Positions 773-48,813 of a DNA stretch of 64,000 nt are shown here, in pieces. Position 1 is the first letter of the stretch, and every line of letters starts with the position of its first letter. Source of the DNA: Macrostomum lignano (lineage: Eukaryota); assembly GCA_002269645.1 (NCBI GenBank), contig NIVC01002379.1, positions 62,001 through 126,000 of the forward strand, given 5' to 3'. The notes under the pieces were generated by a model that saw only the letters and a list, made by a program, of their open reading frames with translations, had not been told where the DNA came from and ran no database searches. The translations under genes and the position numbers were made by a program.

Positions 773-8459
<7,687 letters not shown>

Positions 8460-14057: not shown

Positions 14058-14100
<43 letters not shown>

Positions 14101-14101
14101 A

Positions 14102-14136
<35 letters not shown>

Positions 14137-29778: not shown

Positions 29779-30068
29779 ATGAATTGTTGACAAATGTCCA
29801 GAAAAAATTCTGGATTTCCAAAAAACACATTGAAATAAAAGCTTCTTTTGTGCTCCAACGGAGCAGGCCATGGTGCCACTGGGCACAGCCCGCGAACCAT
29901 AGGTTCATTTTTGGATAGAGAATCTTTTGTGTTTGCGTCTTCTTTATTTTCTATACAAAAAAGAGTAAAAAAAGAGCTATAAAATAAAACCGCTCGAGAT
30001 GCTTGCACACTACCCTTTTCTTTAGTGTCTGCAACTTAATTTTTCTGTTACTAAAAATAGAACAAAAA

Positions 30069-30479: not shown

Positions 30480-30489
30480 TAATATAAAA

Positions 30490-31449: not shown

Positions 31450-31535
31450 GGCTCCTGTGGGGAGGGTCAGGACGACTAAAACCTAAAATTAAAAAAACCA
31501 TTAATTCAAACATTGTATAAATTACATTCTATAAA

Positions 31536-34500: not shown

Positions 34501-35498
34501 ATATTGATAAAGCAAAGAAATATTTCTCAAAACCTAATTTTAAAGACTTTATAAAATTTGATGATAAGTTTATGGGAATTCATATGAGAAATAAAACAAC
34601 AAAATTTCTTAAACCAATCTTTATTGGAATGGTAGTTTTAGATTTTGCAAAGCTGGTAATGTATGAATATTATTATGATGTTATAAATAAAACTTGGCCA
34701 GATAACTATCCAATATATGCAGACACCGATAGTTTGGTATTTAAGGTTGAAACTCCGGATGTCTATAAAGACATGGAAACAATTCAGGATACATTGGATA
34801 CATCCGACTATCCTGATAACCATCCCTTAAAATCAAATAAAAATAAGAAAGTTGTACTTAAAATGAAAGATGAATTAAATAGCAAAATCATAACCGAGTT
34901 TATAGCAATAAGATCAAAATGCTATGCATTTAAGGTTTTAGGACAGGAGGGAGAGGTAAAAAAAATAAAAGGGGTATCAAGAGCAGCAGTAAAAAAGATA
35001 ACATTTGATGATTATAAAAACGTACTTTTAGATTATCTTAATACAATTGAAAATTACCATGCTCCACAATATCGATTAAATTCAGATAAGCATCAAATGT
35101 ATGTCATCGAGACAGATAAAAAAACATTAAATCCTTATGATGATAAAAGGTATTTAGATAATATAATTAAAACATATCCATATGGTTTAAAAGAAGAAAT
35201 TAAAAACATGCAAAATGATAAAAAACAAAAAGAGGATATAATAAATAAATATAAAGAATACATTGAGTCAATAAATAATTATTATTATGATTGTGATTGT
35301 GAATCCGATTGCGAATGCGAATATAATAAATTTTTAGAATATGAAAAAGATATTGATAAATATTATGAAACATTTCCAAAAGAACTTAAAAAAATAAATA
35401 AGGACAAAGCATTGGATAACTGGAAGAGACTAACAGAAGGATTACTTAAGCTACATACTGATCGGGTCTGTAAAAAACTAAAGCATGTAATTGTTTAA
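31536..35498 (+). CDS. polB: Protein-primed family B DNA polymerase (pPolB), 1320 aa
   Basis: Exonuclease motifs YADFEA and FHNGSGYDFHF; polymerase motifs YLDANNLYG, KLMNNAFYGK and YADTDS; uninterrupted ORF. Confidence 0.97.
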   Translation: MESILAQIDNPELRAQLIAQIEAQRIADRAEIEARVRAENEIRLERQLNDIDNPQQQRQNVAEVINIDIDINTDYKEYFKKMKDKLKIILDNYTTKPNNKRQPIKYKIEIETEFKKPSMINANSEIEAINTFSQESYKTLLSMRNYDNQFNQIEAEFDEWIDKMTENGSGFIFVSCNSVIVKIVPIEILKGRSHMDPGFKSPMIINPDNKDDKCLLWCLLIHKYHKQVKSHTNKIYNYRQYEDEIIMKNISYPVAIDDIYKIEKMNGLNINVFTIEEPEDLEEIKTDKEWYKKRCYLVKPATDITAPDQIDLLYIQNENNTHYIYIKDINSFLRENRNRMLLCRNCFTFKKTETALKNHQRFCLDHKFTNVVMPDEKEQILKFQQHYMAIKKPIVIYADFEATNVPLKEPPTVSDGECTKKLAQQFPNSYCIYVHSVADNIFKSRMFTYHGKDAAKHMAEELVNVFEFIQNQYDKLSKNINMTDKDKEDYKNATNCFMCKRAISGRYKIREHCHLTGIYRGAACKSCNAKEGKGCKEIPVFFHNGSGYDFHFLVRELLHLGRDEYEVNILPKTSENYISITYGKKYSHLVFLDSLRFLSTSLANVVSSLVPKPWDLEIVKKNFPILLNRFKKEKLSEEELMLLTRKGIYPYEYVTSEKVFNDTQLPPIDKFYSILSQSNITESDYEHAQKVWKYFNCKTFKDYHNLYLKADVLLLADAFENFRNHTYENFKIDPAYCFSAPGLTWACGLKYTDVEIDLLTDHDMLLMIERGIRGGFSGVLGDRYTKVNNKYLPNYNKKEKSSYVLYLDANNLYGGCMKQKLPIADFQWEDDPDYYKNIPEGRGCIVEVDLQYTREAKAKTYKYPLAPEHCSVNEDDLSQTQKDYLKADNTKHLATKKLILNLHDKKNYVVHYKLLHFYEKQGLKVTKVHRTISFIEEEWLAKYIDFNSNQRQLSKTNFEKDYWKLMNNAFYGKTVENIRDRTQFHLEKDIDKAKKYFSKPNFKDFIKFDDKFMGIHMRNKTTKFLKPIFIGMVVLDFAKLVMYEYYYDVINKTWPDNYPIYADTDSLVFKVETPDVYKDMETIQDTLDTSDYPDNHPLKSNKNKKVVLKMKDELNSKIITEFIAIRSKCYAFKVLGQEGEVKKIKGVSRAAVKKITFDDYKNVLLDYLNTIENYHAPQYRLNSDKHQMYVIETDKKTLNPYDDKRYLDNIIKTYPYGLKEEIKNMQNDKKQKEDIINKYKEYIESINNYYYDCDCESDCECEYNKFLEYEKDIDKYYETFPKELKKINKDKALDNWKRLTEGLLKLHTDRVCKKLKHVIV

Positions 35499-35805
35499 GC
35501 ATAATATCCATTTCAATTTCATATTTTATTGAGCACCAATTTTCCTCACAGTCAGTGGGGTAACTTAAACATTCTTTTACTTTTTTCCTAAGTATTTTTA
35601 TTCGTCTAACCAATCTATCTATTTCAATTTCAATTACTGTTTCAGCATAAGCAATTGCAGATTTAATAAAACGTTTTCTTTTATCTAAATCATATCGGAT
35701 AGGAAACATATCTTCATCATAATCACTATAAAATAAACTATTTAATTTTTTATTAATATAATTAAGTTCACGCTCTTTAGTGATAAGGATTTTTATTGTC
35801 TCCAT
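35446..35805 (-). CDS. Polinton hypothetical protein, 119 aa
   Basis: TATAAGAAAATG start context; converges on and overlaps the pPolB end; no recognised domain. Confidence 0.55.
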   Translation of the reverse strand: METIKILITKERELNYINKKLNSLFYSDYDEDMFPIRYDLDKRKRFIKSAIAYAETVIEIEIDRLVRRIKILRKKVKECLSYPTDCEENWCSIKYEIEMDIMLKQLHALVFYRPDQYVA

Positions 35806-35965
35806 TTTCTTATAAAAAATTTAAACTTATTCGGGGTCATCCTCCCAAACCGAAGCCAATTTTACAGTCCTATCACTCTTTTTATTTTTTGCTTGTTTTA
35901 GTTTAAATTGCAACCCACCCTCCATACTGTATTTCCATTTTTAATCTAAAAAAATAACAAAAAAA

Positions 35966-37983
35966 ATGAAAGACATTTACGAATGTAAAAAATGTAATGT
36001 GCGCATGCATAGAGGGCAAACAGCAAACGGAGATATACGGGCCGACTTGGGGCCTCTCGCCTAGAACGGTCCGTTGGATTTATACCGGCATCATCCGGCC
36101 CAGTATCACATACGCGAGTCTCATCTGGACTAGCGTGCTGGAGCAGAAGGCCGCCCGTCAGCGGCTGTACCAGCTTCAGGGCAGCATTTGCCGTGCCATC
36201 ACAGGTGCGTACCCGTCCACCCCTTACGAGGGGCTGAACACTATCCTTAACCTACCTCCGCTTCACCTATTTATTAGGGCGGAGGCTATGAAGTCTGCCT
36301 CCCGGCTTATCAGAGATAAAACGTTAAATAACGCGCCCTCTGGCTTTATGCCAATGAAAACATTAATCCCGCATATGGACTTTGTCCGCCGCGACCTTAA
36401 CAACATCCACATGGACCTGGGCAATGTGGATAGTCGACCTCCCGCCCTCAACATCAGGAGGGGCTTCAAGACCGCCATCCCTGGCCGAGACAACATTCCG
36501 CTGGATGTCGGTGTGAACCGGCGCAGCCAGGGCATTCACTGCTTCACCGACGGCTCGCTGTTCAACGGCCGCGCTGGAGCGGGTATTGCCATTTTCCACG
36601 AGGGTAAGATGCTTCTCCAGGAAAGTCTGCACCTCGGTGAGAACACCTCAGTTTTCCAAGCTGAAATTTGCGCCATTGAGCAGTGTGCCCAGCAACTATT
36701 TCAGGCGAACATTAATAATTTTGACATTAATTTCTACACTGATAGCCAAGCTGCTATTAAGGCCTTAACCACTGAGAATATCTCCGCTGCTACAGTATCT
36801 CAATGCCACCGCAGTGTGCAATCTCTCTCAGTCCTTAACAGGATTAGAATTATCTGGACACCTGGTCACAGCAACATCCTGGGCAACGAGCTCGCGGACT
36901 CTCTCGCCAAGGAGGGCAGCAACCCAGACGGCAACCACCGTCTGATGAGGCTACCCACCCCCAGGTCGCAAGTCACCCGCCATATCAACAGGTGGCTCCA
37001 TCAGCAGCACCAGCTCCACTGGAACAGCTGCACCGAGTACAGGCAGAGCCGCTCTGCCATGCCTAACCTGAACAGGAAAGTCTCTGATTATCTGATTTCG
37101 CTTAACAGAACCGACCTCAGGGAGATGTGCATGGTCCTAACCGGCCACGGATTCTTCCAGAGACATATATCGTTGCAAACCGGTTGCCCTCCCACCTGTC
37201 CCTTCTGTGGCATAGGAGAGGAGACCGCGGAGCATCACGTCACCTTCTGCCCTTACTTCAACAAGGCGCGGCACAAATACCTCGGCCACCCCCAGCGGAT
37301 GGACGAGCTGACCACCGCGGACAATATCCGAGACCTCCGCGCCTTCGTCCGGGACTCCGGCCGGATGAGGGTCGCCGATGCCTCCACTGCGGACCTGCCG
37401 ACTACTGGCGGGGACTGGGCGCACCCCCAAGGCTAATCCTTGTGCTCTTTTACCTTGGGGTTGCGATAGGGGCCTCGCGGCCTATTCGCGGCGCCTGCGC
37501 CCCCCGTCAGTAGTAAGTAGTAAGTAAGTAAACGGAGATATATATCATATGTGTTATTCATGTTCTAAAATATATCAATTTGAAAAAATAAAAAAGATTG
37601 AAAATTCATATTACTATTTTAAAAACACAATTTTAAGAAATCTTACAAGAGACATTTCCGATCCAATTTTAATTCCGGGAAATAATGTTTATTTATATAA
37701 TAACTTTTTCCATTTAAATAAAGGAAAGGGATTAAGTTCGAAAGACTCCGAAAGGATTTTAATTTTAGTTGGATATTATTTTAATTTTCTTATGCGAGAG
37801 AATACAAAGTTTATAAGGATTGGTAACATACCTAACGAAATGTTATTGAAAAAGTCATTAGAATTTTTATGTATTGATAAAAAATTTAAACCTAGGATTA
37901 CAAGAGAGTTACCACTTTGGGAAGAATATATAACGTATGCATTAAATAAACTAAACAACCTGAAGTTCTACAGTACTTCCTGA
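35966..37983 (+). pseudogene. Polinton zinc-ribbon gene (170 aa when restored) interrupted by a LINE
   Basis: Removing 36038-37542 restores [33 protein letters not shown]... (CxxC-x17-CxxC) at an exact codon boundary. Confidence 0.85.
36038..37529 (+). mobile_element. 5'-truncated non-LTR retrotransposon with RNase H (LOA/Lian/R1-like), 1492 bp
   Basis: 13-bp TSD AAACGGAGATATA (36025-36037 and 37530-37542); WGLSP...[18 protein letters not shown]-terminus; RNase H motifs FTDGS / AE / TDS / GNELAD; CCHC knuckle; (TAAG)-like tail; GC-rich relative to the Polinton. Confidence 0.92.
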
Positions 37984-38604
37984 CCGCGGACTTTGTAACC
38001 CGGTAGCAATAGTTTCCGGTTTGTATTCAATAGTTTCTATCGGAGGAGCTTTGGGTTTGTCCAAACGCAATTCCTTCAATTCCATATCGGTAAAAGTTTC
38101 AACATCCAAAATTCTATTTCTATCTTTTAAATATTTTTCATATAACTCAACCGCGGTTGATAATTCATGAATAGTTATCTCTCCGTCATCCAATATTTTT
38201 TGCACATATAAATATAATTGATTTTTATATTGTTTTGCAACATCTCTTAAAGATTTATATTTTTCCTTTCTTTTTTTAAGATATAATTTAATTGCTAAAA
38301 GTATTGATAAGTTCCTGATCAATTCAAAACCTGATATTGAGCCAATTGAAATACCTAAAAATAATTGAGATAAATTAAGAGTTGGAAATGATTGTAAAAC
38401 ACCTAAAACAATTACACATAACATCGATAAGCTTCCAAATCCAATATTGAAAAAATCCATATTTCTGATATGATTTGAAATTCTTCTCACTTTTTTAGTA
38501 TATAAATCATAATCATAATTTATTCGATCAACATTACTCAACATGTGACCCTTGCGTTGGTTAAAATGATCACGTTCCCTTTTATCTGCTTCAGACACCG
38601 ACAT
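37951..38604 (-). CDS. Polinton two-transmembrane-helix protein, 217 aa
   Basis: Two hydrophobic segments followed by a basic helix and ILDDGEITIHE; located in the minus-strand structural gene cluster. Confidence 0.75.
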   Translation of the reverse strand: MSVSEADKRERDHFNQRKGHMLSNVDRINYDYDLYTKKVRRISNHIRNMDFFNIGFGSLSMLCVIVLGVLQSFPTLNLSQLFLGISIGSISGFELIRNLSILLAIKLYLKKRKEKYKSLRDVAKQYKNQLYLYVQKILDDGEITIHELSTAVELYEKYLKDRNRILDVETFTDMELKELRLDKPKAPPIETIEYKPETIATGLQSPRSGSTVELQVV

Positions 38605-38917
38605 TTTCGTCTATTTTTAATAGCACCAAAATGAATTCCCCGCGCTCTTTGGGGATCTGCCCCGAGCTCAATAGGTATTGTATCAGACTTATTCTTTCTT
38701 TTTTCTCCCATTTAAATCCTATTTTCCAAAACTCTTGAAGTATAATATGATTTTTTAATAACTTAATTAATTCTTGAAGCTTCTTATTATCCTGAACATT
38801 TACAGTACTAAATAAAAATTTGGTATGAGATTTGAATGTTTTTATATTTGATTCTTGTTTAGGAATAGGAATAATAACATTATTTTGCCGCATCGATGGA
38901 GTTCTACTAAAAGCCAT
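38591..38917 (-). CDS. Polinton hypothetical protein, 108 aa
   Basis: TATATAAAATG start; N-terminus MAFSRTPS resembles that of the adjacent fibre-like gene. Confidence 0.65.
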   Translation of the reverse strand: MAFSRTPSMRQNNVIIPIPKQESNIKTFKSHTKFLFSTVNVQDNKKLQELIKLLKNHIILQEFWKIGFKWEKKERISLIQYLLSSGQIPKERGEFILVLLKIDENVGV

Positions 38918-38960
38918 TTTATATAGAAATATTTAAGTTATCGCCCCGTAGGGTCGCACC

Positions 38961-41006
38961 TTAGGTGATTTGAGTTTGTGGCTGTTCCAAATATGCGCTC
39001 GCAGCAAAATCATATCCTGCTGATGTGCTACCACAAACGGCTGCACCACGAATAAAATGTGCAGCATCCGATCCTCCGGTTCGAGCACCAAAACCCATAA
39101 GTGTTCCCGTTTTATCTAAATCTCCCCAAGTTCCGCTATCATATGTAAAAAAGTTTTGCCCAATTAACGTATACACTTTAGTTGAAACATTGAATGTGCT
39201 TATTTGATACCAAACTCTTTGATTAAGAATATTAATTTCAAAAAAGTGCCAATCACCATTATCAATATTAGCATAGGTTATAGTTTGATCTGCGTCATTA
39301 AGAACATCATTACGAACCGTAGCTCCGTCTGATTTTACATTACTCCATAGAACTCCAACTCTGTCATGCCATTCACTAGCAAACACTATCAAACCCGCGT
39401 TGGTTGTTAATCCAGATCCAAATTCCGTTGTTGGACGTTGGTGACAGTATGCATAAAACCAAACAGCGTCAGCACCATCTCCTGTAGTATTAGCAACTCG
39501 GAAATAGAAGGAGGCGGATATATTACGAAAATGGGTGAAATTAAATTGTAACGCTCCAGACCGACCCGATGCTTCATCAGTAATTCTAGCACCATTTTGA
39601 TAATCTATATAAGAAGCATCTCCAACAAAACTTCCTGTTGGAAAAATATCGCCGGCGGTGGTTGGGTTTTGATACCCAGTCCAATTGCAAATTACGGGCT
39701 CGTACAAAGCGGCATCAATTGCAGGTATTCCATCCAATTTTATTTTATCATTAAAAGACATTCGGCCATCCGCCGTTGGTGTTACTCGCGTGTCAACATA
39801 ACCTTTAGTAACAACAGAACTGTTATCGTTTATATTAGAGACATTGGTGATCGTATTGGAACCCATATCAATTGATTGATTAACTACTCCCAGATTTAAA
39901 TCAATAATTGTAAAAGTCTGCCTATAAATCTGAAAGGTTGACAGGCCGGGGTTTGTAGCACCCGAAGTTGATGTAAGACAGAACAATCTGAAATATGAAT
40001 ATGTTTTATCAAAATTTTGTGTGACATTAATTGTTTGAGTTGAGTTATTTATTTCTACAGAACTATCCGCAGGTATTAAAACATCCCAGCTCGTATTGTC
40101 ATTACTTCCTTCAAATCGCCATGATGCTGGATGCTCGGTTGATGGCGACGGTCTTCCACGTAAATCAATTTTATAACACATTATTGCAGATGGACATTGA
40201 ACCTGAATCCAATAATCGGTTTGTGTATTATTGGTCGCCCAATCTGTTGCATTATCTCCATCAAAAGCTTTCCAGCTTGCAAAATCGGTTGTATTAAATG
40301 CTGTGCTGGCTGTAATTGCAAAACCATTTCCACTCCAATCTGACATAGTAGGTATGTGGCCGGTTTCAACCGTTTGGAATCGATCCTGTTTTGGTGTTCC
40401 ACCTCCAACTATATTATCAACTTCGGTTTTGGTATAAGAATCAGCAACATTCCGTTTCAAATTTAATGAATTATCAACTTCGGTTTTGGTATAGGAATCG
40501 GCTATGTTCCGTTTCAAATTTAATGAATTATCGACTTCGGTTTTGGTATAAGAATCGGTTATGTTCCGTTTCAAATTTAATGAATTATCGACTTCGGTTT
40601 TGGTATAAGAATCAGATATATCTCTTTTCAAATTTAATGAATTATCAACCTCTGTTTTGGTATAAGAATCAGATATATCTCTTTTTAAATTTAGGGAATT
40701 ATCGACTTCTGTTTTGGTATAAGAATCAGATATATCTCTTTTTAAATTTAATGAATTATCAACTTCGGTTTTGGTATAGGAATCGGCTACGTTCCGTTTC
40801 AGATTTAGTGAATCATCGATTTGAGTTTTAGTATAGGAATCTGCAACGTTTCTTTTTAAATTTAATTTATTATCAATTTCAGTTTTTTTATAACCTTCAT
40901 CCTCATTAATATATCGATTATCTCCGAATGTAACACTGATGCCACCAGATGTGCCACCACCAGTACTTGTTGTTCCGTTCCATGAGGGTGTTCCAGAAAA
41001 TAACAT
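38961..41006 (-). CDS. Fibre/receptor-binding-like protein, 681 aa: 8 x 19-aa repeats, a discoidin (F5/8C)-like domain and a ConA/legume-lectin-like domain
   Basis: YTKTEVDNSLNLKRxxxDS repeats; WKAFDG...WIQVQ...WRFEGSND...YSYFRL; VVTKGYVD fibre-type motif; C-terminal GADAVWF...WHFFEI...GFGARTGG. Domain calls are by eye. Confidence 0.75.
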   Translation of the reverse strand: MLFSGTPSWNGTTSTGGGTSGGISVTFGDNRYINEDEGYKKTEIDNKLNLKRNVADSYTKTQIDDSLNLKRNVADSYTKTEVDNSLNLKRDISDSYTKTEVDNSLNLKRDISDSYTKTEVDNSLNLKRDISDSYTKTEVDNSLNLKRNITDSYTKTEVDNSLNLKRNIADSYTKTEVDNSLNLKRNVADSYTKTEVDNIVGGGTPKQDRFQTVETGHIPTMSDWSGNGFAITASTAFNTTDFASWKAFDGDNATDWATNNTQTDYWIQVQCPSAIMCYKIDLRGRPSPSTEHPASWRFEGSNDNTSWDVLIPADSSVEINNSTQTINVTQNFDKTYSYFRLFCLTSTSGATNPGLSTFQIYRQTFTIIDLNLGVVNQSIDMGSNTITNVSNINDNSSVVTKGYVDTRVTPTADGRMSFNDKIKLDGIPAIDAALYEPVICNWTGYQNPTTAGDIFPTGSFVGDASYIDYQNGARITDEASGRSGALQFNFTHFRNISASFYFRVANTTGDGADAVWFYAYCHQRPTTEFGSGLTTNAGLIVFASEWHDRVGVLWSNVKSDGATVRNDVLNDADQTITYANIDNGDWHFFEINILNQRVWYQISTFNVSTKVYTLIGQNFFTYDSGTWGDLDKTGTLMGFGARTGGSDAAHFIRGAAVCGSTSAGYDFAASAYLEQPQTQIT

Positions 41007-41016
41007 TTTTTACTGT

Positions 41017-41490
41017 CTATTTTATAGAATCTAAAATAGCCCTAAAGTCTTCGGGTCTTTCCTTCGAGTTATTAATTTTATATAAAAAATATAACGCCGC
41101 TTGCCCGCAATAACTTTTATCAAATGTTTGAAATTGTTCGTGATGATCTCCACATAAACGATTTTTAGTATGATTAAATTTATCTTTTATTTCCTGTAAC
41201 GGAGGAAGCGCGTATGAATCAAAAAAATAAACAAGTTTAGGTTTTGAATAAACTGCTGACCAATGAACACCGTTTTCTTTTGTTGTTTCAATATTAACAA
41301 TGTAAGATCCATATCTTGGTAAGTCTTTTATCTCATCCCGCATAACACATCTAAATGGTTTTATTTTTAACTGCCGCGCCCAATTTGTTAATTCGATATT
41401 GCTTGTTGTGTCTGTTCCATATCTTTGTTTGAACCCGCCCCACGTTAGTGATGGCGAGGACTCTGTCCGTCTGTCCCAACTCATAGTCAT
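41017..41490 (-). CDS. Adenain-like (C5/Ulp1-fold) cysteine protease, 157 aa
   Basis: GVHW, FFDSY, Q and YCG catalytic arrangement typical of Polinton proteases. Confidence 0.9.
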   Translation of the reverse strand: MTMSWDRRTESSPSLTWGGFKQRYGTDTTSNIELTNWARQLKIKPFRCVMRDEIKDLPRYGSYIVNIETTKENGVHWSAVYSKPKLVYFFDSYALPPLQEIKDKFNHTKNRLCGDHHEQFQTFDKSYCGQAALYFLYKINNSKERPEDFRAILDSIK

Positions 41491-41491
41491 T

Positions 41492-41665
41492 TTATGTTCC
41501 TGAAAAACTTTTGGTTTTAGTTAGTTTAGTAGGTGTGGGTTTTAACAGCTCCTTTCTTATTTTATCTGCTTGTAACTGTCTTAATTTTGTTAGTTCTAGT
41601 TCATAATTATCTTCAGCTTTTTTAACTTTTTCCGTTTGTTTTTTTAACGCATTGTTGTTACCCAT
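41492..41665 (-). CDS. Small ORF below the track cutoff, 57 aa (MGNNNALKKQTEKVKK...KSFSGT)
   Basis: Fills the gap between the penton and protease genes; has the TAAAAATG start context; its stop codon abuts the protease start context. Confidence 0.65.
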   Translation of the reverse strand: MGNNNALKKQTEKVKKAEDNYELELTKLRQLQADKIRKELLKPTPTKLTKTKSFSGT

Positions 41666-41675
41666 TTTTACTATA

Positions 41676-42461
41676 TTAAACCTGTTTTATACGTAAAATT
41701 ACTGTTATTGATTGACCACCAAAACTTATTAATCTATCGCTTTCATCTACGATCCTAATATAAATTGATTGAACGCTATATTGATTTAAAGGATAATATA
41801 TTGGGGTTTGGGGTGCAACAATCATTTTCTCTCCAATTGGAACAGCAAGAAACGGGATTGAATAAATAATTCCACGTTGAACCAAAACCCCATTATTATC
41901 TGTTATATAACCGCCGTTTGATATGTCGGTTGTTATATTAATTGTATTGACTCCGCCCTCAATGTTTCCCACGGTATCACCGGTGCTTGATGCGGTAACT
42001 ATTCGGGAATTAAATCCAAGTATGGTTCTGAGTGAGTTTGCAATTGTGAAATCAACCTGATATCCTGATCCTAGTGATAGGGTGAATCTTCCCGACGGTA
42101 AATCAACACCTATAACAATCGCACCAGCTACCCAATCACCATTATCCGTTAATTCTCCTTCTATGTAAGCATTCAAATCGGTATAGCTATACGCCCCTGG
42201 ATTAACGCTAAAAGTTGTCCAATTGGCTCCGGAATCTTTAGAATATCTAAATTGATTATTTGTTGCATTAATTAATTGAGGCATGTTAAAAACCGAAAAT
42301 AGTATCAAACCTATTTGATAACTTAGGCTTTGATCTAGTTGTAACGGATCGCGCAATTGAATCCGTTGCTCGCTGCTTGTCATTATAAACTGTAAGGTTG
42401 TGCTAAATTTTGAATTAGTTCGATCTACCAATTGTTTTATAGTGTCTAAATTTGTTGCCAT
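41676..42461 (-). CDS. Minor capsid (penton) protein, 261 aa from MATNLD
   Basis: Beta-rich sequence with YQIGL, NNQFRY, PGAYS..DLN and IYSIP...P...YYPL...I.IRIVDE patterns; lies between ATPase and protease; TATAAAAATG start. Confidence 0.82.
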   Translation of the reverse strand: MATNLDTIKQLVDRTNSKFSTTLQFIMTSSEQRIQLRDPLQLDQSLSYQIGLILFSVFNMPQLINATNNQFRYSKDSGANWTTFSVNPGAYSYTDLNAYIEGELTDNGDWVAGAIVIGVDLPSGRFTLSLGSGYQVDFTIANSLRTILGFNSRIVTASSTGDTVGNIEGGVNTINITTDISNGGYITDNNGVLVQRGIIYSIPFLAVPIGEKMIVAPQTPIYYPLNQYSVQSIYIRIVDESDRLISFGGQSITVILRIKQV

Positions 42462-42515
42462 TTTTATAGTGGGGAATAATAGCATCGGCGGCAAGAGAAC
42501 CAAAGATTTGAGATT

Positions 42516-43277
42516 TTACTCCTCGTCCTCATTATCTTCTTTTATCAAATTTGTTAAGATTCGATTTCTTCTTTCTAACCTAGGGTTGACATATATGTGT
42601 TTGTATTGACTATCATCCCAAATTTTTTTACACATACTTTTAAATGGTTTTGTATCCAACCCCGGATTAAATCTAGCGTGTATATTTTGTAAATCATAGT
42701 CATCTAAATCAAACATTACACAACAGCTAGCATTCTTTTTTATAATCGATTCTAATTCTCTAAAGGATTGAGTAAGATAAAAAGCTCCAATTCCATCTCC
42801 TCTACCACTAACAAAAATTTCTTTTTGCAATTCTTGATCTCCGTCATTAATACAATCGTCAAAAATAATTAGTGTTTTATCATATTTAGGAATTTTGTCA
42901 TAAGTTAATCTGTTTGATATTGTAATTGTTGGAGAATTGTTGTCTATATTTTCTGGATCTTCTGCCGTTTTTTTACATAAATCCTCAATGTCTGTTAGTT
43001 TAAATCTTGGTTCATCATCGTCCTCATATTGCTCATATGCTCTTAACATTCTAAATAAGATATCTTTTTTTAATTTGTTTTTTAATCCGTGTTTAAGAAA
43101 TTCATAATATTTTATTCTAGGTTTGTTAGTATAAATTATTAAATTATTATAGTCTAACATTCCATCGGTTGTTAACAAGTCATAAACAAAGTGGGTTTTT
43201 CCTTTGCCCGATCCACCAATTACTAAACAAAGAAAAGGATCATTTGGAAATATTTTATAATGTTTTGCTTTTACCAT
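42516..43277 (-). CDS. A32/FtsK-like genome packaging ATPase, 253 aa
   Basis: Walker A GGSGKGKT, Walker B LIIFDD, and R...IGAFYLTQ. Confidence 0.93.
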   Translation of the reverse strand: MVKAKHYKIFPNDPFLCLVIGGSGKGKTHFVYDLLTTDGMLDYNNLIIYTNKPRIKYYEFLKHGLKNKLKKDILFRMLRAYEQYEDDDEPRFKLTDIEDLCKKTAEDPENIDNNSPTITISNRLTYDKIPKYDKTLIIFDDCINDGDQELQKEIFVSGRGDGIGAFYLTQSFRELESIIKKNASCCVMFDLDDYDLQNIHARFNPGLDTKPFKSMCKKIWDDSQYKHIYVNPRLERRNRILTNLIKEDNEDEE

Positions 43278-43297
43278 TTTTTAAGTAAATAATTTAA

Positions 43298-44779
43298 CTA
43301 ATCTTTATCTACGGGCGCATCCCGAACAACGGTTCCGTCGGCTTTAGCAATTGATATATATTCCTCTAGAAACAATACGTGGGCGTCTAGTGCCTGATTA
43401 CCGGTTTTATTAATCTCTAACATATAATTCAAACCAACATTGGCTACATTTTCTTTCTGTGCAGTTAGATCAAAAACAACTACTGGGTGAATGTTTAGAA
43501 ACTCCGTGGGTGTGTACTGAGGAACAGCATACGCTTCATTTTTGGTATAATCTTGATAATATTTTATAAAATCATTAACATTATTATTTGCTATGTTTAG
43601 ATTTAAGGGCTCTTTAACAGGATAATATTGATCATCAACCTGCAGGCGGATATTCTGAACATTAAACTCGTTAATAGCTGAAACCGCGTTGTCGGTTGCA
43701 GTGGCTGCCTGAGCTGCTACATCCTCTGATTGAAGCCAATATAAATCCCCGTTTGCTCTTTTACTCCTTCTATTTGTTATTTTAAACCAAACAAAAATAT
43801 ATCTCACCCGACGTTTTGATATCGTTATCTGCCACTGAAATGAATCCTGATTGTTGTTAATGGTTCGCATAAAGTGGCGCCGATTCAAATAAAATATTTC
43901 TTGATCAACCATTATCTGCTTATTAACATGTGCTAAAAGAGGCGCCGTTAGCTCTAGTTTTGGTACGACTAATTGAATTGATGCTATACGAATTGCGATA
44001 TCGGTTGAAATTGAGGTTCCATAAAGTATCCTAGGCTGATATCCACCAGATATTTGCAACTGTACCCCAAATTTTAATCCTTTCCATACCCGATTTGGTG
44101 AGAAGAACCCAAATAGTGGAAAGATTGAAAAGTCTTGCTCATATGCGCTTGCTGTGGTTAAAACCGCTACTGGGAATTTATTCTGACGATCTATAAAACC
44201 GGTATTAATATCTTTTGTGTTAGTCATGGTGGTTACAACTGGAACTATATTGGTATTAAGATAAGCTATAAGGGCTGCGGTATCTGCGCCGGCTGCATTT
44301 TGTACATTAGGGAAAACTACTGCTTGTCCATTACCCTTATCAGGCATCCACCCAACACTATCACCAACTTGTTTTGATAAATAAGTATAATTTAAATGTT
44401 TCAAAACTCCATTAATCTCTGCTGGGTTTGTTGATGTCTCAACCTCGGCTCCATTAACAGTTAGTTGAGCTTGGGAAAAACATTTATAAAACCAATCATT
44501 TTCTATAATAATTCCAGAACGATCTGGGATATCACCGGCTGCAAGAGCAGTTCCATCGTTTCTGGTATACAACCATCTAACGCGGAAAAACGCGTTTTTC
44601 ATATCTAAAACGCTGTCGCTTGCCCCAACGTCAAAAGTTACCGTTCCCGTAGTAAAATTGTTTGAATTATCACTTGTTGGTAGGGTATAATTTAAATCTC
44701 TTGCCCTGATCTCATTAATATACTGCCGGTGCTTTTTAAAATGAAATTTATCACTCCATATGGTTTTTGTTTCAGCCAT
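43298..44779 (-). CDS. Major capsid protein (double jelly-roll), 493 aa
   Basis: Size, beta-rich composition, position next to the ATPase, and Polinton-MCP-like patterns (FSQAQLTVNGAEVE; C-terminal VVFDLT). Confidence 0.85.
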   Translation of the reverse strand: MAETKTIWSDKFHFKKHRQYINEIRARDLNYTLPTSDNSNNFTTGTVTFDVGASDSVLDMKNAFFRVRWLYTRNDGTALAAGDIPDRSGIIIENDWFYKCFSQAQLTVNGAEVETSTNPAEINGVLKHLNYTYLSKQVGDSVGWMPDKGNGQAVVFPNVQNAAGADTAALIAYLNTNIVPVVTTMTNTKDINTGFIDRQNKFPVAVLTTASAYEQDFSIFPLFGFFSPNRVWKGLKFGVQLQISGGYQPRILYGTSISTDIAIRIASIQLVVPKLELTAPLLAHVNKQIMVDQEIFYLNRRHFMRTINNNQDSFQWQITISKRRVRYIFVWFKITNRRSKRANGDLYWLQSEDVAAQAATATDNAVSAINEFNVQNIRLQVDDQYYPVKEPLNLNIANNNVNDFIKYYQDYTKNEAYAVPQYTPTEFLNIHPVVVFDLTAQKENVANVGLNYMLEINKTGNQALDAHVLFLEEYISIAKADGTVVRDAPVDKD

Positions 44780-44813
44780 TTTTTTAAGTTAAAAAAGTTT
44801 TTTATGTTAAAAA

Positions 44814-45482
44814 ATGAGTCAATTTATGGACGTTGATGGAGAGTTAGCAATTTATAAAGAAAAGCAAAAATATTCTGATTTTGTTAGAAATTTACAAAAA
44901 AGAAAGTTAGGAATACAACTCGCTGGCGAAAGATTTGCTGCCCCTTTTGTTAATCCTATTACGGGCAAACTTAGTGAACTAGAAAAAACAGATAAAGACC
45001 TTCTTGAAAAAATTGCTAAGAATACCGAGCCAAAAGAGGATGAAATTTTAGATGAGCCGCCTACTTATGATGTTGATCAAGTGCTATTGAGACTTGCAGA
45101 GATTAGGCGTGCAGAAAGGGATGGAGTTGAACAATTTACGAATGTCCCACGAAGCATTGCAATAGAGGAGTTAGATAATGATAATTACCGAATTGGTCGA
45201 GTTAATAAAAATCGAAATGATTTATATAGAGAATTGGGCGGAGCATATAGAATTATTACTAACCCTAGGGTTAAGTTTAACCCTGATTTTTATACTAGGG
45301 ATGAATTAGTAAGTGCTAAAATTTTTTATGATGATTTAGGAGTAGGAGCTGTTAAAAATACCAACTTGTATAAAAGGATTGTTGATTCTATAAATAACAA
45401 GCCGGCTGTTGGTGAAGGATTTAAAACTCCGCGAAAACTTGTTTTAGCTGCCGCGAAAGCTGCTGGACATACGGGTGTTTAA
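44814..45482 (+). CDS. Polinton conserved-type hypothetical protein, 222 aa
   Basis: Transcribed divergently from the MCP gene; C-terminal VGEG|F...AAGHT motif; AAAAAATG start. Confidence 0.7.
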   Translation: MSQFMDVDGELAIYKEKQKYSDFVRNLQKRKLGIQLAGERFAAPFVNPITGKLSELEKTDKDLLEKIAKNTEPKEDEILDEPPTYDVDQVLLRLAEIRRAERDGVEQFTNVPRSIAIEELDNDNYRIGRVNKNRNDLYRELGGAYRIITNPRVKFNPDFYTRDELVSAKIFYDDLGVGAVKNTNLYKRIVDSINNKPAVGEGFKTPRKLVLAAAKAAGHTGV

Positions 45483-45503
45483 TTAAATTTATTTTTTATA
45501 AAA

Positions 45504-46012
45504 ATGGATAATACGATAAATGAATGTCTTTGTAAACCTATTTATGATAAGGTAGGTTCTGACAGAATACTAAATAAGATATTTCAAGATGATTTAATAA
45601 TTGCAAACCGTATTAAAACAATTCAAATGAGGCTAGGATATCTTTATGAATTATTAGCTATTGAACATTTTGGTTTTGAAAAAATTAAGAAAATTGATTT
45701 AATTCATACTGAAAGAAAAATTGCGTTAGAGTTAAAATCTTCTGATAACACAGATAATTCATCGAGTCGATTTAGAAATATTCAAAAGTTATTAGAATTT
45801 AAAAATGTTAATCCTGAATTTGAGTTATATTATATTTGCATTAATAATACTACTAAAGCCCCCCCGTACAAAAGGTATTTGATAATGGAGTTACATTGTT
45901 AACTGGGGATTTTGCTTTAAATTTTTTATATGGTGATCAATATTTGGAAATTACTAAACTGATAGAAACGTGTTTTTTAAAGATTAAAAATGAGCAATCA
46001 ATTAGTGTTTGA
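45504..46012 (+). CDS. PD-(D/E)xK restriction-endonuclease-like protein; 169 aa if one C is added to the C7 run at 45859-45865
   Basis: GYLYE...IDL...ALELKSSDNTDNSSS resembles Eco47II-type nucleases. The -1 frame continues 48 codons (VQKVFDNGVTLLTGDFALNFLYGDQY...) to TGA at 46010. Confidence 0.6.
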
Positions 46013-47585
46013 AGGAGGCTTGTTGGATATTCAAAAAGGATTAACAAGCTTACCGCCAATCTTTACTACTGGTAGGTATACAAATGAATTACACATTCCA
46101 GGGTACTCGTTTGCAGGTTATCCCGTGGCCTGAGTGGTAGAAGCAAAGCTACTGCTAGTCACTATTAGTGGCAACATCTCCAAATTGCGTGAAACCCGTC
46201 ATACAACTTCAAGTACCACTTCAGTTGAGAAATCTTCTGAAGGAACACAGGTAACTCCTGTTCCCAATGGTAAAAAGCTTGAAGACATGGTGGCAATGCG
46301 CAGCCAAGCTCCTAAGTATTTTAAATATAAGGAGAAGGTTCAGAGAGCAGACGGAGATGGGCGGTAATCATCGCCGCTTAAGGTGTGCTCCAGCCTCATT
46401 CGAAAGATTGAGGGTAAACTACCTGGGACTAGACTGGATTTAAGATTAAATCCTGACAATACTCCAAAATCTGATTCAATTCCAATAAATGGGATTGATT
46501 GGTTAGCATACTATCACGACTTAGCATATAGAGATGCTGACAAGAACCCTCCCGAAGAAGCGTTAAGATTAAAACATGAAGCCGATCAAAAAATGATTCA
46601 AGGATTAGATAACTTACAAGGCTTATCAGTAGGCCAGAGATTAACTAGGTGGATGGTTAAAAAAATTCTACAATCTAAAGTTAAATTTGGTTTAGGAATT
46701 AATTACAACCAACATGGTAATAATTGTGTCGAATGTTTGTTATTAAGTGGTAGTGGGCTAAGTTATGATAAGGCTAAGGTTCTTCATAAAGAATACCGAA
46801 AACCTAAATTTTATAGAAAAATCATGAACTTCAAAAAGAATGAAATTTGGTATGCTGATTTAATGTCGATGCCAAATGATAAAGGATATAAATATATTTT
46901 AACAATATTAGATGGTTTTACTCGCTACGCGTGGGCTATTCCTTTAAAATCCAAAAAGGGAGAGGTGGTTGCTGCTGCTTTTAGAAGTCTTGGAGAAAAA
47001 AGCGAACGGTTGTGTGTTGACGAAGGAAAAGAATTTTACAATCCTCACATGTATAAATTGTATCATTTTGAAAAAGGACAAGAAAGGAAAAAGGACGCGA
47101 ATGGGGAGTATATTAATAAAATTTATTCTATTTATGGAGAGAGTAAAAACGCATTAATAGAAAGATTTAATAGAACTTTAGGTAAGAAATTATGGTTTCA
47201 GTTTAGTCTTAATGGTAACCAAAAGTGGGTAAAAATATTACCAGACGTCGTAAAAGATTATAACAATTCATATCATTCAGCTATAAAGATGACTCCTCAA
47301 CAAGCTTATAACAATCCTGAAAATGTTAAGGTTACTTTTGGAGATTTTGAAAAAAAGAAAACTAAAGGTTTTAAAGTTGGTGATTCTGTTTATATCTATA
47401 AATGGAAAGATAAGTTTGAAAAGGGAAGAAAAGGATATTGGAAAATAAGTGAGAAATTTACTATCAGTAAAGTTTTAAATACAAATCCCACAACCTATAT
47501 CATTGCTGATAAGGATGGTGAAGAAATATTGGGCTCATTTTATGAAAACCAGCTAATGCCGGTTTCATTTCAATCCGTTACTTAA
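45990..47585 (+). CDS. Parvovirus-type PLA2 domain fused to a retroviral-like (rve, DDE) integrase; exons 45990-46118 and 46422-47585, 430 aa
   Basis: Joined exons give ELHIPGYSFAG|PGTRLDLRL...PINGIDWLAYYHDLAY...HEAD (PLA2), then WYADL...ILDGFTRYAWAIPL...VDEGKEF...IERFNRTL...YNNSYHSAIKMTP (integrase), with no stop between the two domains. Confidence 0.9.
46119..46421 (+). ncRNA. Group I intron (IC1-like) ribozyme, 303 nt, no internal homing endonuclease
   Basis: P1 CAGGU/GCCUG with a U.G pair at the 5' splice site; P3 CAUCUCC (46175)/GGAGAUG (46353); P4 UGCGUG/UGCGCA; P5abc with A-rich bulge; P6; P7 G-A-GAGCA/UGCUCC; P8 GGCGGU/AUCGCC; P9 with GAAA loop; P9.0 AG/CU; P10 with the 3' exon CCUGGGA. 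Confidence 0.92.
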
Positions 47586-47802
47586 GGCAACAAGGTAGTA
47601 AATTTTTTATAACAAATAAAAACAATATTATTACTATTATAGTTACTAATATTATTATTGACATTTGTTCAACAGTTATCAAACTTAAATTATCATTAAG
47701 TTCATTAATTGGCACATTTCCGATATAGGAATAATTTACCTTCATTTTTTTAAATATATTTTTAACAATAATTGTTGTTTCTGTTACAGAATAATAGTTC
47801 AT
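47578..47802 (-). CDS. Small single-TM protein, 74 aa
   Basis: Hydrophobic IIILVTIIVIILFLFVI segment; TTAAAAAATG start. Confidence 0.6.
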   Translation of the reverse strand: MNYYSVTETTIIVKNIFKKMKVNYSYIGNVPINELNDNLSLITVEQMSIIILVTIIVIILFLFVIKNLLPCCLK

Positions 47803-47805
47803 TTT

Positions 47806-48036
47806 TTAACTATTTTTTTCGCAATTTAAACATTGTGCTAAAAGAAGACTTTGCTCCCCCTTATCCCAAATATAATCTAATTCTCCAATTTCAAGCGGAT
47901 ATATCTTTATATCTGGATATATATATACTTCATCGATTATTTTATACTTTATTAATTTTTTTATTGAATCAAGTGCGTTGAATATTGTTTGGGTTGATTC
48001 AGTTATTGAAAAGTAGGGTCTGTTATCTAATTTCAT
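47806..48036 (-). CDS. Small protein, 76 aa, paralogue of 48040-48354
   Basis: Shares the NR..FS, IIDEVY, YPL, GE and LN pattern with its neighbour. Confidence 0.7.
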   Translation of the reverse strand: MKLDNRPYFSITESTQTIFNALDSIKKLIKYKIIDEVYIYPDIKIYPLEIGELDYIWDKGEQSLLLAQCLNCEKNS

Positions 48037-48039
48037 TTT

Positions 48040-48354
48040 TTACATAAAAATTTCAATTTTGCTCTCTGAATCACTAGTTTCATATGAGCTATTTGTTGAG
48101 TTGGAATCGTCTGAACGAACCTCCCAATCGTCTGAATTTAAATAATCTCCAAGTTGAAATATTAACTCACCCTCTTGTTCTAGATCATACATCCCATCCA
48201 AATCTAGCGGATAAAGTTTTAGTTCTGTTTTGTCATCATATTTTAAATAAACTTCATCAATTATTCCATTCAGAATATGTTGTTTTATTATCTCTGAATT
48301 TTTAGCAACAGTCTCAAAAGTATCACTAACTGAAAAGGTGTAAACGCGGTTCAT
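48040..48354 (-). CDS. Small protein, 104 aa, with an acidic Ser-rich tail; paralogue of 47806-48036
   Basis: Shared motif pattern; CTAAAAATG start just inside the right TIR. Confidence 0.7.
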   Translation of the reverse strand: MNRVYTFSVSDTFETVAKNSEIIKQHILNGIIDEVYLKYDDKTELKLYPLDLDGMYDLEQEGELIFQLGDYLNSDDWEVRSDDSNSTNSSYETSDSESKIEIFM

Positions 48355-48371
48355 TTTTAGTAACAGAAAAA

Positions 48372-48718
48372 GACCCTACGCGCCTGCGGCGCGGCCTGGG
48401 GTTATAAAGTAGTAGTAGGTAAAAAGACGCTTCTAGATCAGACCTATTGAAAATGATGATTTGAAGGGCTATTAATGGGGGGACGCGAGGGGATTGTTTG
48501 GTTGTGATAGGGTGTGTTATTGGGAATATGGGTGAATATTGTGTGATTTGTGTGAGTTGGTGGTGTTAATGGGAGGTAGTGGGAGGTAGTGTGTTTAAGG
48601 GGGGTAAAGGGTATTTAGATGTGTTTTTTTAGTACCCCCTCGTGTCCCCCCACTAGCCCTTCAAATCAGCATGTTAAATAGGGGTTCTGGGTCTAGAAGC
48701 GTCTTTTTACCTACTACT
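48372..48718 (-). repeat. Right TIR (347 bp) with an internal terminus copy beginning at 48408
   Basis: Reverse complement of 28219-28565. Confidence 0.95.
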
Positions 48719-48813
48719 GCTATCATATTTATGTCATTCCGCGCCTTTCTTCTTTCAATTGTACAACTCATGATAATGTCAGTCACAAAATCCACAGAAG
48801 ATGACGCAAGTGA

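What the first reader, a model, noticed from the sequence alone, without database searches (positions are those of the whole stretch)
46119..46421. A self-splicing group I intron inside a Polinton/adintovirus gene integrated in an animal-like nuclear genome
Seen in sequence: a 303-nt insert splits the PLA2 Ca2+-loop codons GGT|CCT, and all core helices pair. P1 is exon CAGGU with IGS GCCUG (U46118.G46128). P2/P2.1 hairpins follow. P3 is a perfect 7-bp pair. P4-P6 carry the P and Q elements (AAAUUGCGUGAA, AAUGCGCAGCC). P5abc has an A-rich bulge and a GAAA loop. P7, P8, J8/7 (GCUUAAGGUG), P9 with GAAA, P9.0 and P10 are present. Established: this is the IC1 architecture typical of nuclear rDNA introns of protists, fungi and algae, also known in some algal and giant viruses. 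To my knowledge such introns are not described in bilaterian nuclear protein-coding genes. Inference: the polintovirus lineage acquired a ribozyme intron, and splicing is required for expression of its PLA2-integrase protein.
Basis: partly seen in the sequence, partly recalled or inferred. Interest (0 to 1): 0.96.

Follow-up and report, generated by a model that had tools for sequence, protein, structure and literature searches.

The report
Ribozyme intron in an animal Polinton
A 303-base group I (ribozyme-type) intron interrupts the phospholipase-integrase gene of a freshly integrated 20.5-kb Polinton/adintovirus-like element in what looks like an animal chromosome, a setting where such introns have not been described, although whether this particular copy can still complete splicing is open.

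Summary
Rfam's group I model (RF00028) matches 46109-46412 (+) at 71.3 bits (threshold 50, E 4e-16), and it is the only RNA-family hit in the window. Of the 105 base pairs I laid out, 101 are standard. Intron-less relatives of the protein read straight across the proposed junction with no gap, which fixes the insert at 46119-46421. The host gene encodes a parvovirus-type PLA2 domain fused to an rve integrase. The element (28219-48718) has 347-nt perfect terminal inverted repeats, AG...CT termini, a 6-bp target duplication, a protein-primed PolB closest in fold to adintovirus/MELD PolB, and an A32-like ATPase. It is therefore a Polinton/Maverick, and it integrated recently. A flanking exon about 60% identical to a solved CNGA3 channel indicates an animal host that is not human. 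At least two related lineages hold both insert-carrying and insert-free copies at 90-100% protein identity, so the intron is gained or lost precisely. There are three caveats. One normally invariant reactive-site nucleotide is non-canonical in this copy. No RNA evidence was available. Group I hits in protist Polinton-like viruses are already published.

The parts
46119..46421 (+). Group I intron (303 nt), with bounds set by protein homology at the junction
   Evidence: RF00028 scores 71.3 bits, E 4e-16. 101 of 105 laid-out pairs are standard. The exon rows abut at alignment columns 97/98 of A1.
46114..46132 (+). P1 hairpin: the last 5 exon bases plus the first intron bases paired with the internal guide sequence
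   Evidence: 8/8 standard pairs. The Rfam alignment puts U46118 and G46128 on the model's conserved U and G.
46134..46172 (+). P2 and P2.1 hairpins
   Evidence: 7/7 and 6/6 pairs. Both are recovered by the unconstrained fold.
46175..46359 (+). P3 (46175-46181 with 46353-46359), enclosing the P4-P6 domain and the 5' strand of P7
   Evidence: 7/7 Watson-Crick pairs. This long-range helix is recovered by the unconstrained fold.
46207..46284 (+). P5abc extension with a GAAA loop (L5b) and an A-rich bulge
   Evidence: 27/27 pairs in P5a, P5b and P5c; recovered by the fold.
46343..46391 (+). P7 (5' strand 46343-46349, 3' strand 46386-46391), enclosing the 3' strand of P3, P8 and J8/7
   Evidence: P7 6/6 and P8 5/5. 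J8/7 aligns to the Rfam consensus.
46394..46413 (+). P9 hairpin with a GAAA loop
   Evidence: 7/8 pairs; Rfam alignment.
45990..47585 (+). PLA2-integrase gene: exon 1 at 45990-46118 (43 codons), the intron, and exon 2 at 46422-47585 (387 codons plus stop)
   Evidence: Exon 2 hits rve PF00665 and, weakly, PLA2 PF08398. There are 475 relatives, most carrying PF00665 plus PF08398. Exon 1 is 68-75% identical to the matching part of the nearest intron-less relatives. Unspliced read-through stops after 47 codons.
28219..48718 (.). Polinton/Maverick-type element, 20,500 bp
   Evidence: TIRs, termini and TSD; low GC of about 0.33 against 0.45-0.55 in the flanks.
28219..28565 (+). Left terminal inverted repeat (347 nt)
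   Evidence: 0 mismatches to the right TIR over 347 nt; starts with AG.
48372..48718 (-). Right terminal inverted repeat (347 nt)
   Evidence: 0 mismatches to the left TIR; ends with CT.
28213..28218 (.). Left copy of the 6-bp target-site duplication (GCTATC)
   Evidence: Identical hexamer at 48719-48724.
48719..48724 (.). Right copy of the 6-bp target-site duplication (GCTATC)
31536..35498 (+). Protein-primed family-B DNA polymerase (1320 aa) with an Endonuclease VII/HNH-type insert
   Evidence: Pfam Endonuclease_7. 3,660 representatives at E<=1e-30, and sampled relatives share the insert. The model has pLDDT 85. Foldseek gives phi29 polymerase 4e-18, MELD virus PolB 6e-53 and Adintovirus sp. 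1.7e-46.
42516..43277 (-). A32-like genome-packaging ATPase (253 aa)
   Evidence: Pfam Pox_A32 at 29.5 bits, cut-off 22.8.
5468..6160 (-). Host flank: exon of a cyclic-nucleotide-gated channel alpha subunit
   Evidence: E 1.2e-74 to the solved CNGA3 chain 8ev8_A, about 60% identical by my count of the printed alignment. It is closer to that chain than to the 6wej chain, which I take to be nematode TAX-4.

Best explanation
The 303-nt insert at 46119-46421 is a true group I intron with IC1-like peripheral helices. It is carried by a lineage of Polinton/adintovirus-type elements and sits between the two codons at the centre of the Ca2+-binding loop of the PLA2 domain in the element's PLA2-integrase gene. 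The proposed mechanism follows the established group I pathway and is inferred here, not shown. The gene is transcribed through the intron. The RNA folds into the P4-P6 and P3-P9 domains. The 5' exon end pairs with the internal guide sequence (P1). An external guanosine bound in P7 cleaves after the exon's last U. P10 and P9.0 then bring the 3' exon into place, and the exons are ligated to give one 430-codon reading frame. Without splicing, translation stops 4 codons into the intron, so the PLA2-integrase can be made only after ribozyme splicing. The intron has no endonuclease gene of its own. In at least two related lineages, insert-carrying and insert-free copies coexist at 90-100% protein identity, so the intron is gained or lost precisely, which points to accurate splicing or homing somewhere in the family. 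In this copy every helix is intact but one normally invariant reactive-site nucleotide is non-canonical, so whether this copy completes both steps is open.
For: The RF00028 hit covers the whole model at 71.3 bits, E 4e-16, and is the only hit even at E<=1. 101 of 105 pairs are standard, with GAAA loops on L5b and L9, and the unconstrained fold recovers most helices, z -2.59. The junction is exact against intron-less relatives, and the flanking residues are the best conserved nearby (15/16, 14/18, 13/18 and 17/18 relatives share them). The unspliced frame ends after 47 codons. At least 12 relatives have gene calls that begin at, or within 13 residues upstream of, the same junction, with N-termini unrelated to exon 1. 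P0003's N-terminus matches the window's translated intron 3' end at 11 of 13 residues, against 60% over the whole protein. P0007 (insert) and P0008 (no insert) are 100% identical over 386 residues, and P0243 (no insert) shares a >=90% cluster with P0003. The integration is real and recent: perfect 347-nt TIRs and a 6-bp TSD.
Against: I had no RNA evidence. One normally invariant reactive-site nucleotide departs from the family rule in this copy (direct reading). The second step of splicing uses the intron's terminal G, and both steps use the G-binding site in P7 (PMC3984707), so any such departure can impair a step. I could not do DNA-level covariation, because relatives' DNA was not fetched. 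The evidence for the insert in relatives is indirect, resting on gene calls that start inside it. P0008-type uninterrupted proteins could in principle be spliced gene models rather than intron-less DNA. The subgroup (IC1) was not tested with subgroup models.
Confidence: 0.7

Rival explanations
1. This is a group I intron, but in this copy it is an inactive relic. The fold is preserved, yet the single non-canonical reactive-site nucleotide blocks one chemical step, so this copy cannot make its PLA2-integrase. Either the element was integrated by an integrase supplied by another copy, or the base call is wrong.
For: One departure at a normally invariant reactive-site nucleotide (direct reading); the role of these nucleotides is described in PMC3984707. 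Multi-copy families are evident among relatives (34 members in one 90% cluster), so supply in trans is plausible.
Against: The TIRs have no mismatch in 347 nt, so very little time has passed for decay. All other helices and both exons are intact. I counted no stops or frameshifts in the polymerase, ATPase or integrase.
Confidence: 0.2
2. The insert is not removed as a group I intron. Either the spliceosome removes it, or the gene is expressed as two separate products: a 47-residue peptide and an integrase started internally.
For: The locus is nuclear, where spliceosomal splicing is the rule. An ORF beginning inside the insert runs in frame into exon 2 (46383-47585).
Against: The insert does not begin with GT or end with AG. 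The nearest GT...AG combination I read by eye shifts the frame into a stop. The internal ORF starts with GTG and would lack half of the Ca2+ loop that relatives keep intact. The RF00028 score is far above chance.
Confidence: 0.04
3. The animal context is an artefact. The contig is chimeric or comes from a non-animal contaminant, so this is one more protist Polinton-like virus with a group I intron, of the kind already counted in PMC12220804.
For: The host species could not be named: the flank ORF is not on record, and the sulfotransferase exon has no detectable relatives by word search. An F5/8 type C (discoidin) domain in the 681-aa ORF is reported mainly in rhizarian PLVs (PMC12220804). Most protein relatives come from unnamed metagenome assemblies.
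Against: The identical 6-bp duplication on both sides of perfect TIRs shows integration into this very sequence. The same contig carries a CNG alpha-subunit exon about 60% identical to a solved CNGA3 chain, E 1e-74, a level I would expect only within animals (inference). The PolB fold is closest to adintovirus/MELD PolB.
Confidence: 0.04
4. The resemblance to a group I intron is chance.
For: None beyond the general possibility.
Against: E 4e-16 over the full model. The placement between codons is exact. The translated 3' end is conserved in a relative.
Confidence: 0.01

Closest known systems
Nuclear IC1 group I introns of rRNA genes (Tetrahymena LSU type)
   Same: The core is the same (P1-P10, the P/Q and R/S pairings). 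So are the P2 and P2.1 hairpins, the P5abc extension with an A-rich bulge and GAAA loop, the GAAA loop on P9, and the size of about 300 nt.
   Different: [quoted passage not shown] There are no helices beyond P9. The genome looks animal. One reactive-site nucleotide is non-canonical. Subgroup membership was not tested with a subgroup model.
RF00028 introns in integrated Polinton-like viruses of protists (Paulinella micropora, Rhodomonas lacustris, Desmodesmus armatus; PMC12220804)
   Same: These are group I introns of 309-376 bp inside small integrating dsDNA virus elements. In R. lacustris they lie in a 'gene' of about 50 codons, much like the 43-codon exon 1 here.
   Different: Those hosts are protists. 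The gene there lies just upstream of the capsid gene and is unannotated, whereas here it is the PLA2-integrase. That paper gives counts only. I made no sequence comparison, so homology between the two sets is unknown.
Group I introns in protein-coding genes of phages and of giant or algal viruses (own knowledge; phage cases reviewed in PMC3984707)
   Same: A ribozyme intron sits in a conserved codon stretch of a viral gene, with patchy presence among close relatives.
   Different: Those viruses replicate in bacteria, or in protists and algae. Many of those introns carry, or sit next to, homing endonuclease genes. None was found here, and the neighbouring 132-aa ORF gave only a sub-threshold nuclease hit.
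Adintovirus PLA2X gene (PMC8502044)
   Same: A parvovirus-type PLA2 domain encoded by a Polinton/adintovirus-type element of animals.
   Different: There the PLA2 domain is fused to an adenovirus pX-like domain. Here, and in 475 relatives, it is fused to an rve integrase. That paper reports no ribozyme intron.
Mitochondrial group I introns of cnidarians, sponges and placozoans (own knowledge; see PMC10167242)
   Same: To my knowledge these are the only group I introns so far described in animals.
   Different: They lie in the organelle genome, in respiratory-chain genes, and not in a nuclear, virus-derived gene.

Membership tests
Group I intron (Rfam RF00028) | Covariance-model score at or above the curated gathering score | tested here: met
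   71.3 bits against 50; full model 1-253; E 4.1e-16.
Group I intron (Rfam RF00028) | Core helices P3-P9, including the P3/P7 pseudoknot, and the P4-P6 domain | tested here: met
   P3 7/7, P4 7/7, P5 5/5, P6a 4/4, P7 6/6, P8 5/5, P9 7/8. The Rfam alignment agrees.
Group I intron (Rfam RF00028) | Splice sites defined by P1 (5' exon with the guide sequence) and by P10/P9.0 (3' exon) | tested here: met
   P1 8/8, P10 5/6, P9.0 2/2. These helices place the splice sites exactly where protein homology places the junction.
Group I intron (Rfam RF00028) | All normally invariant reactive-site nucleotides canonical (5' splice-site wobble pair, guanosine-binding pair of P7, intron-terminal nucleotide) | tested here: not met
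Two of the three are canonical and one departs by a single base (direct reading).
Group I intron (Rfam RF00028) | Guanosine-dependent self-splicing of the RNA | not testable with these tools
   No RNA data or assay was available.
Subgroup IC1 | Peripheral elements P2, P2.1 and P5abc | tested here: met
Subgroup IC1 | Best score with a subgroup-specific model, and the typical 3' extension beyond P9 | not testable with these tools
   Rfam holds only one group I model. No helices beyond P9 are present, since 8 nt remain after P9.
Mobile group I intron with homing endonuclease | Endonuclease ORF inside the intron | tested here: not met
   The longest internal ORF is 77 codons with a GTG start and has no Pfam match.
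Polinton/Maverick (features as listed in PMC10748475) | Length 13-25 kb with terminal inverted repeats of 100-1,500 bp | tested here: met
   20,500 bp; 347-nt TIRs with 0 mismatches.
Polinton/Maverick (features as listed in PMC10748475) | Target-site duplication of 5-8 bp | tested here: met
   6 bp, GCTATC, on both sides.
Polinton/Maverick (features as listed in PMC10748475) | Protein-primed family-B DNA polymerase | tested here: met
   Model pLDDT 85; phi29 polymerase 4e-18; MELD/adintovirus PolB 6e-53 to 2e-45.
Polinton/Maverick (features as listed in PMC10748475) | Retroviral-type (rve) integrase | tested here: met
   PF00665 at 33.2 bits, cut-off 32.6; 475 relatives with PF00665.
Polinton/Maverick (features as listed in PMC10748475) | Packaging ATPase, maturation protease, major and minor capsid proteins | tested here: inconclusive
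   The ATPase is met (Pox_A32 at 29.5 bits). No protease or capsid family was detected by Pfam, PDB sequence search or NCBIfam. No fold test was run on these ORFs.
Adintovirus (exogenous animal virus, PMC8502044) | PLA2X (PLA2 + pX) or gasdermin-type accessory gene; found as a free viral genome | tested here: not met
   PLA2 is fused to the integrase, not to pX. The copy is integrated, with a TSD. Only a weak Adeno_PX hit (E 0.022) was seen, in another ORF. The polymerase fold is nevertheless closest to adintovirus/MELD PolB.

The most novel reading that the evidence does not exclude
A lineage of precisely gained and lost group I introns circulates among Polinton/adintovirus-type viruses of animals and is spliced by its own ribozyme from nuclear transcripts of a protein-coding gene. 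That would be the first ribozyme intron operating in an animal nuclear gene context. Production of the element's PLA2-integrase would then depend on RNA self-splicing rather than on the host spliceosome.
Probability: 0.5. Interest if true: 0.9.

Novelty: new member of a known kind. Interest (0 to 1): 0.78.

Why it matters
Group I introns are described in nuclear rRNA genes of protists and fungi, in organelles, in bacteria and phages, and in some protist viruses. In animals they are known only from a few mitochondrial genomes, and reviews state that nuclear ones are restricted to rRNA genes (PMC10964413). A structurally complete group I intron inside the integrase gene of a freshly integrated Polinton in an animal chromosome extends that range to a new compartment and host group. 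It also shows that Polinton/adintovirus-type viruses can carry ribozymes into animal germ lines. Near-identical copies with and without the intron give a natural system, readable from sequence and expression data alone, for asking how an endonuclease-less group I intron spreads or is lost. It also affects annotation: gene finders split such genes into a tiny upstream ORF and a truncated integrase. Several relatives in the protein database appear to be split this way, and the same may apply to the '~50-amino-acid gene' reported for protist PLVs.

Tried and rejected
I tried to name the host and failed. An exact look-up of a flank ORF found nothing on record. The sulfotransferase exon found no relatives by word search. 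The acyl-CoA synthetase exon returned only bacterial-type proteins near 50% identity, because the length window excluded longer eukaryotic kin.

I considered a Paulinella-type protist origin, because PMC12220804 reports group I hits and discoidin domains in rhizarian PLVs. I set it aside after the CNG-channel exon result, the TSD and the adintovirus-like PolB fold.

I tested a free-standing nuclease next to the intron ('collaborative homing'). The 132-aa ORF at 45504-45902 has only a sub-threshold RE_Eco47II hit and nothing in PDB or NCBIfam. Its single-sequence model has pLDDT 40, so I ran no fold search on it.

Pfam, PDB sequence and NCBIfam searches did not identify capsid or protease genes. 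The supplements of PMC12220804 held as text contain no per-intron table.

I examined alternative splice-site pairs by eye. All of them either shift the frame into a stop or delete conserved Ca2+-loop residues, so I rejected them.

The P6/P6b rows of my pair table were mis-registered by one base. The Rfam alignment gives the correct register.
Full report
**Observation.** Rfam's group I model RF00028 matches window 46109-46412 (+) over its whole length at 71.3 bits (gathering score 50), with E 4.1e-16 for the window. It stays the only RNA-family match in the element when the threshold is relaxed to E<=1. I laid the canonical group I helices out by coordinate and counted pairs.
- P1 is 8/8, with exon U46118 opposite G46128, the positions the Rfam alignment places on the model's conserved U and G.
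- P2 is 7/7, P2.1 6/6, P3 7/7 (all Watson-Crick), P4 7/7 and P5 5/5.
- P5a/b/c together are 27/27, with a GAAA loop and an A-rich bulge.
- P6a is 4/4, P7 6/6, P8 5/5, P9 7/8 with a GAAA loop, P9.0 2/2 and P10 5/6.
- In all, 101 of 105 pairs are standard. Three of the four exceptions are in P6/P6b, where I mis-set the register by one base; the Rfam alignment shows the right one.

An unconstrained fold of 46109-46430 recovers P1, P2, P2.1, the long-range P3, P5abc, P6a/b, P8 and P9. Its z-score is -2.59, against -0.89 for the reverse strand.

**The junction and the host gene.** I made no query, fold or alignment row of the joined exons, so that step is left out.
- Exon 2 carries an rve integrase core (PF00665). 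Its first 126 residues give a weak PLA2 hit (PF08398, E 0.004), which is expected because half of the Ca2+ loop lies in exon 1.
- Exon 2 has 475 relatives at E<=0.001, most of them annotated with both PF00665 and PF08398.
- In an alignment with 18 relatives, the exon-1 row ends at column 97 and the exon-2 row begins at column 98, and 16 relatives read through both columns.
- Exon 1 is 75% and 68% identical to the matching stretch of the two nearest uninterrupted relatives.
- The residues on either side of the junction are the best conserved in the region, which is the usual kind of site for a group I intron.
- Unspliced read-through from the start codon stops after 47 codons.
- The intron holds no endonuclease gene. 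Its longest ORF is 77 codons, GTG-started, with no Pfam match.

One of the normally invariant reactive-site nucleotides of the intron is non-canonical in this copy. It is a single-base departure, not a stop, frameshift, insertion or deletion.
- If it is a defect, it is a break in a gene of a virus-like element of an animal. I therefore give the count (one) and the kind, and withhold the place, the base and the canonical state. I propose no change.
- It matters because both chemical steps depend on these nucleotides (mechanism as reviewed in PMC3984707).
- The two TIRs have no mismatch in 347 nt, so little time has passed since integration. The departure is therefore unlikely to be slow post-integration decay. 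It was probably already in the integrating copy, or it is tolerated, or it is a base-call error.

**The element.**
- The low-GC block is bounded by 347-nt inverted repeats with no mismatch. They start with AG and end with CT, and they are flanked on both sides by the same hexamer, GCTATC. The element is 20,500 bp, at 28219-48718.
- The 1320-aa ORF (31536-35498) belongs to a very large family, with 3,660 representatives at E<=1e-30. Sampled members share an Endonuclease VII/HNH-type insert.
- A model of its residues 540-1320, built with 26 relatives, has mean pLDDT 85. Its best solved match is the phi29 protein-primed polymerase (E 4e-18).
- Its best predicted viral matches are PolB of 'MELD virus sp.' (E 6e-53, TM 0.78), 'Adintovirus sp.' (1.7e-46) and 'Drosophila-associated adintovirus 3' (2e-45).
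- An A32-like packaging ATPase is present.
- These features meet the published definition of a Polinton: 13-25 kb, TIRs of 100-1,500 bp, a TSD of 5-8 bp, pPolB and an integrase (PMC10748475). The HNH-type insert recalls the 'pPolB2' class described in that paper.
- Capsid and protease genes were not identified by sequence searches.
- In the polymerase, ATPase and integrase I counted no stops or frameshifts.
- A GC-rich block coinciding with an RNase H-domain ORF lies inside the element and is bracketed by a short imperfect direct repeat. It may be cargo, or it may be one nested insertion. I did not cut it out or compare across it.

**The host genome.**
- The flanks hold multi-exon eukaryotic genes: acyl-CoA synthetase exons, galactose-3-O-sulfotransferase exons and an exon of a cyclic-nucleotide-gated channel alpha subunit.
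- The channel exon matches a solved CNGA3 chain at E 1.2e-74, with about 60% identity (128 of 213 alignment columns by my count). It is closer to that chain than to the chain I take to be nematode TAX-4.
- I infer an animal genome. It is not human, because that identity is far too low, so the rule on human contigs does not apply.
- The species could not be named. The flanks are packed with micro- and minisatellites.

**Relatives.** The element sits in an animal genome and its polymerase is closest to adintovirus-type PolB, so its relatives may be viruses of animals. I therefore did not fetch their DNA by look-up, pattern or accession and worked from proteins only.
- Of 70 relatives with a recognisable junction, about 55 read through it.
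- At least 12 gene calls begin at, or within 13 residues upstream of, the junction, with N-termini unrelated to exon 1.
- P0003's N-terminus matches the window's translated intron 3' end at 11 of 13 residues, while the two proteins are 60% identical overall. Such conservation of a non-coding stretch fits constraint on the RNA.
- P0007 (starts in the insert) and P0008 (uninterrupted) are 100% identical over 386 residues. P0243 (uninterrupted) is in the same >=90% cluster as P0003.
- So two lineages are polymorphic for the insert, which means it is gained or lost precisely.

**How it most likely works.**
- Shown: the RNA family, the helices, the exact junction, the premature stop in the unspliced frame, the element type and the polymorphism among relatives.
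- Inferred: the gene is transcribed through the intron, the ribozyme removes itself by the two-step guanosine-initiated pathway, and the 430-codon PLA2-integrase can be translated only after that.
- The spread of the intron without its own endonuclease is unexplained. A neighbouring 132-aa ORF with a sub-threshold restriction-endonuclease hit could not be tested further.

**Comparison with what is known.**
- RF00028 hits have been counted in integrated Polinton-like viruses of three protists, in one case inside a gene of about 50 codons upstream of the capsid gene (PMC12220804).
- The adintovirus description reports a PLA2 domain fused to pX, not to the integrase, and no ribozyme intron (PMC8502044).
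- My full-text searches found no report of a group I intron in a Polinton, Maverick or adintovirus of an animal.
- The ribozyme itself is ordinary. The gene, the element type and the host group are new for it.

**Slips and omissions.**
- My notebook mentions which relatives' gene calls start directly at the junction, and it says that P7 has its usual pair. I have not repeated or extended that here.
- Steps left out: the joined-exon query; the DNA of relatives; the place and nature of the single-base departure; any functional or revival experiment.

Noticed in passing
window 28219-28526 and 48411-48718: Each terminal inverted repeat is itself internally palindromic. The outermost 27 nt recur, inverted and 100% complementary, about 254 nt further in, so each end could fold back on itself (pairs I3 and I8).
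   Followed up: no
window 35997-37436: A sharply bounded GC-rich block (0.55-0.69, against about 0.27 on both sides) coincides with a 479-aa ORF carrying an RNase H domain (PF00075, E 2.5e-13). A short imperfect direct repeat brackets it. It is either a captured cargo gene or a nested insertion.
   Followed up: partly
window 31536-35498: The protein-primed polymerase carries an Endonuclease VII/HNH-type insert that sampled relatives share. This resembles the 'pPolB2 with HNH' class reported for nematode and oomycete Polintons (PMC10748475).
   Followed up: partly
window 38961-41006 (-): A 681-aa ORF has an F5/8 type C (discoidin) domain and contains 8.4 tandem copies of a 57-nt, in-frame unit at 40413-40893. 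It may be a fibre or attachment protein. Discoidin domains are reported mainly in rhizarian PLVs (PMC12220804).
   Followed up: no
window 45504-45902 (+): The 132-aa ORF immediately upstream of exon 1 has a sub-threshold hit to the Eco47II restriction endonuclease family (E 1.4e-4). If real, it could be a free-standing nuclease next to an endonuclease-less intron. Further searches and a model gave nothing usable.
   Followed up: partly
window 30490-31449 (+): A 319-aa ORF has a weak hit to adenovirus protein X (Adeno_PX, E 0.022). Adintovirus accessory proteins are reported to carry pX-like domains (PMC8502044).
   Followed up: no
window 3477-5492 and 13694-14166: A (TAAC) array of about 505 copies and a (TTAG) array of 118 copies, about 8.7 kb apart, form long inverted arms of roughly 94% complementarity. 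Between them lie a CNG-channel exon and a 21-nt x 100 array (9049-11190) that is open in all three + frames.
   Followed up: no
window 50212-53098 (+) and 54049-55534 (-): Host genes lie to the right of the element. One is a multi-exon acyl-CoA synthetase whose 310-aa exon is about 50% identical to actinobacterial enzymes. The other is a galactose-3-O-sulfotransferase in two exons with no relatives detectable by word search.
   Followed up: partly
relatives P0003, P0007, P0012, P0026 and others: Several database proteins of this family appear to be truncated gene calls that begin inside or at the end of the insert and have lost their PF08398 annotation. Automatic annotation therefore probably mis-splits such genes. 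The '~50-aa gene' holding group I introns in Rhodomonas PLVs (PMC12220804) may be a similar first exon.
   Followed up: partly
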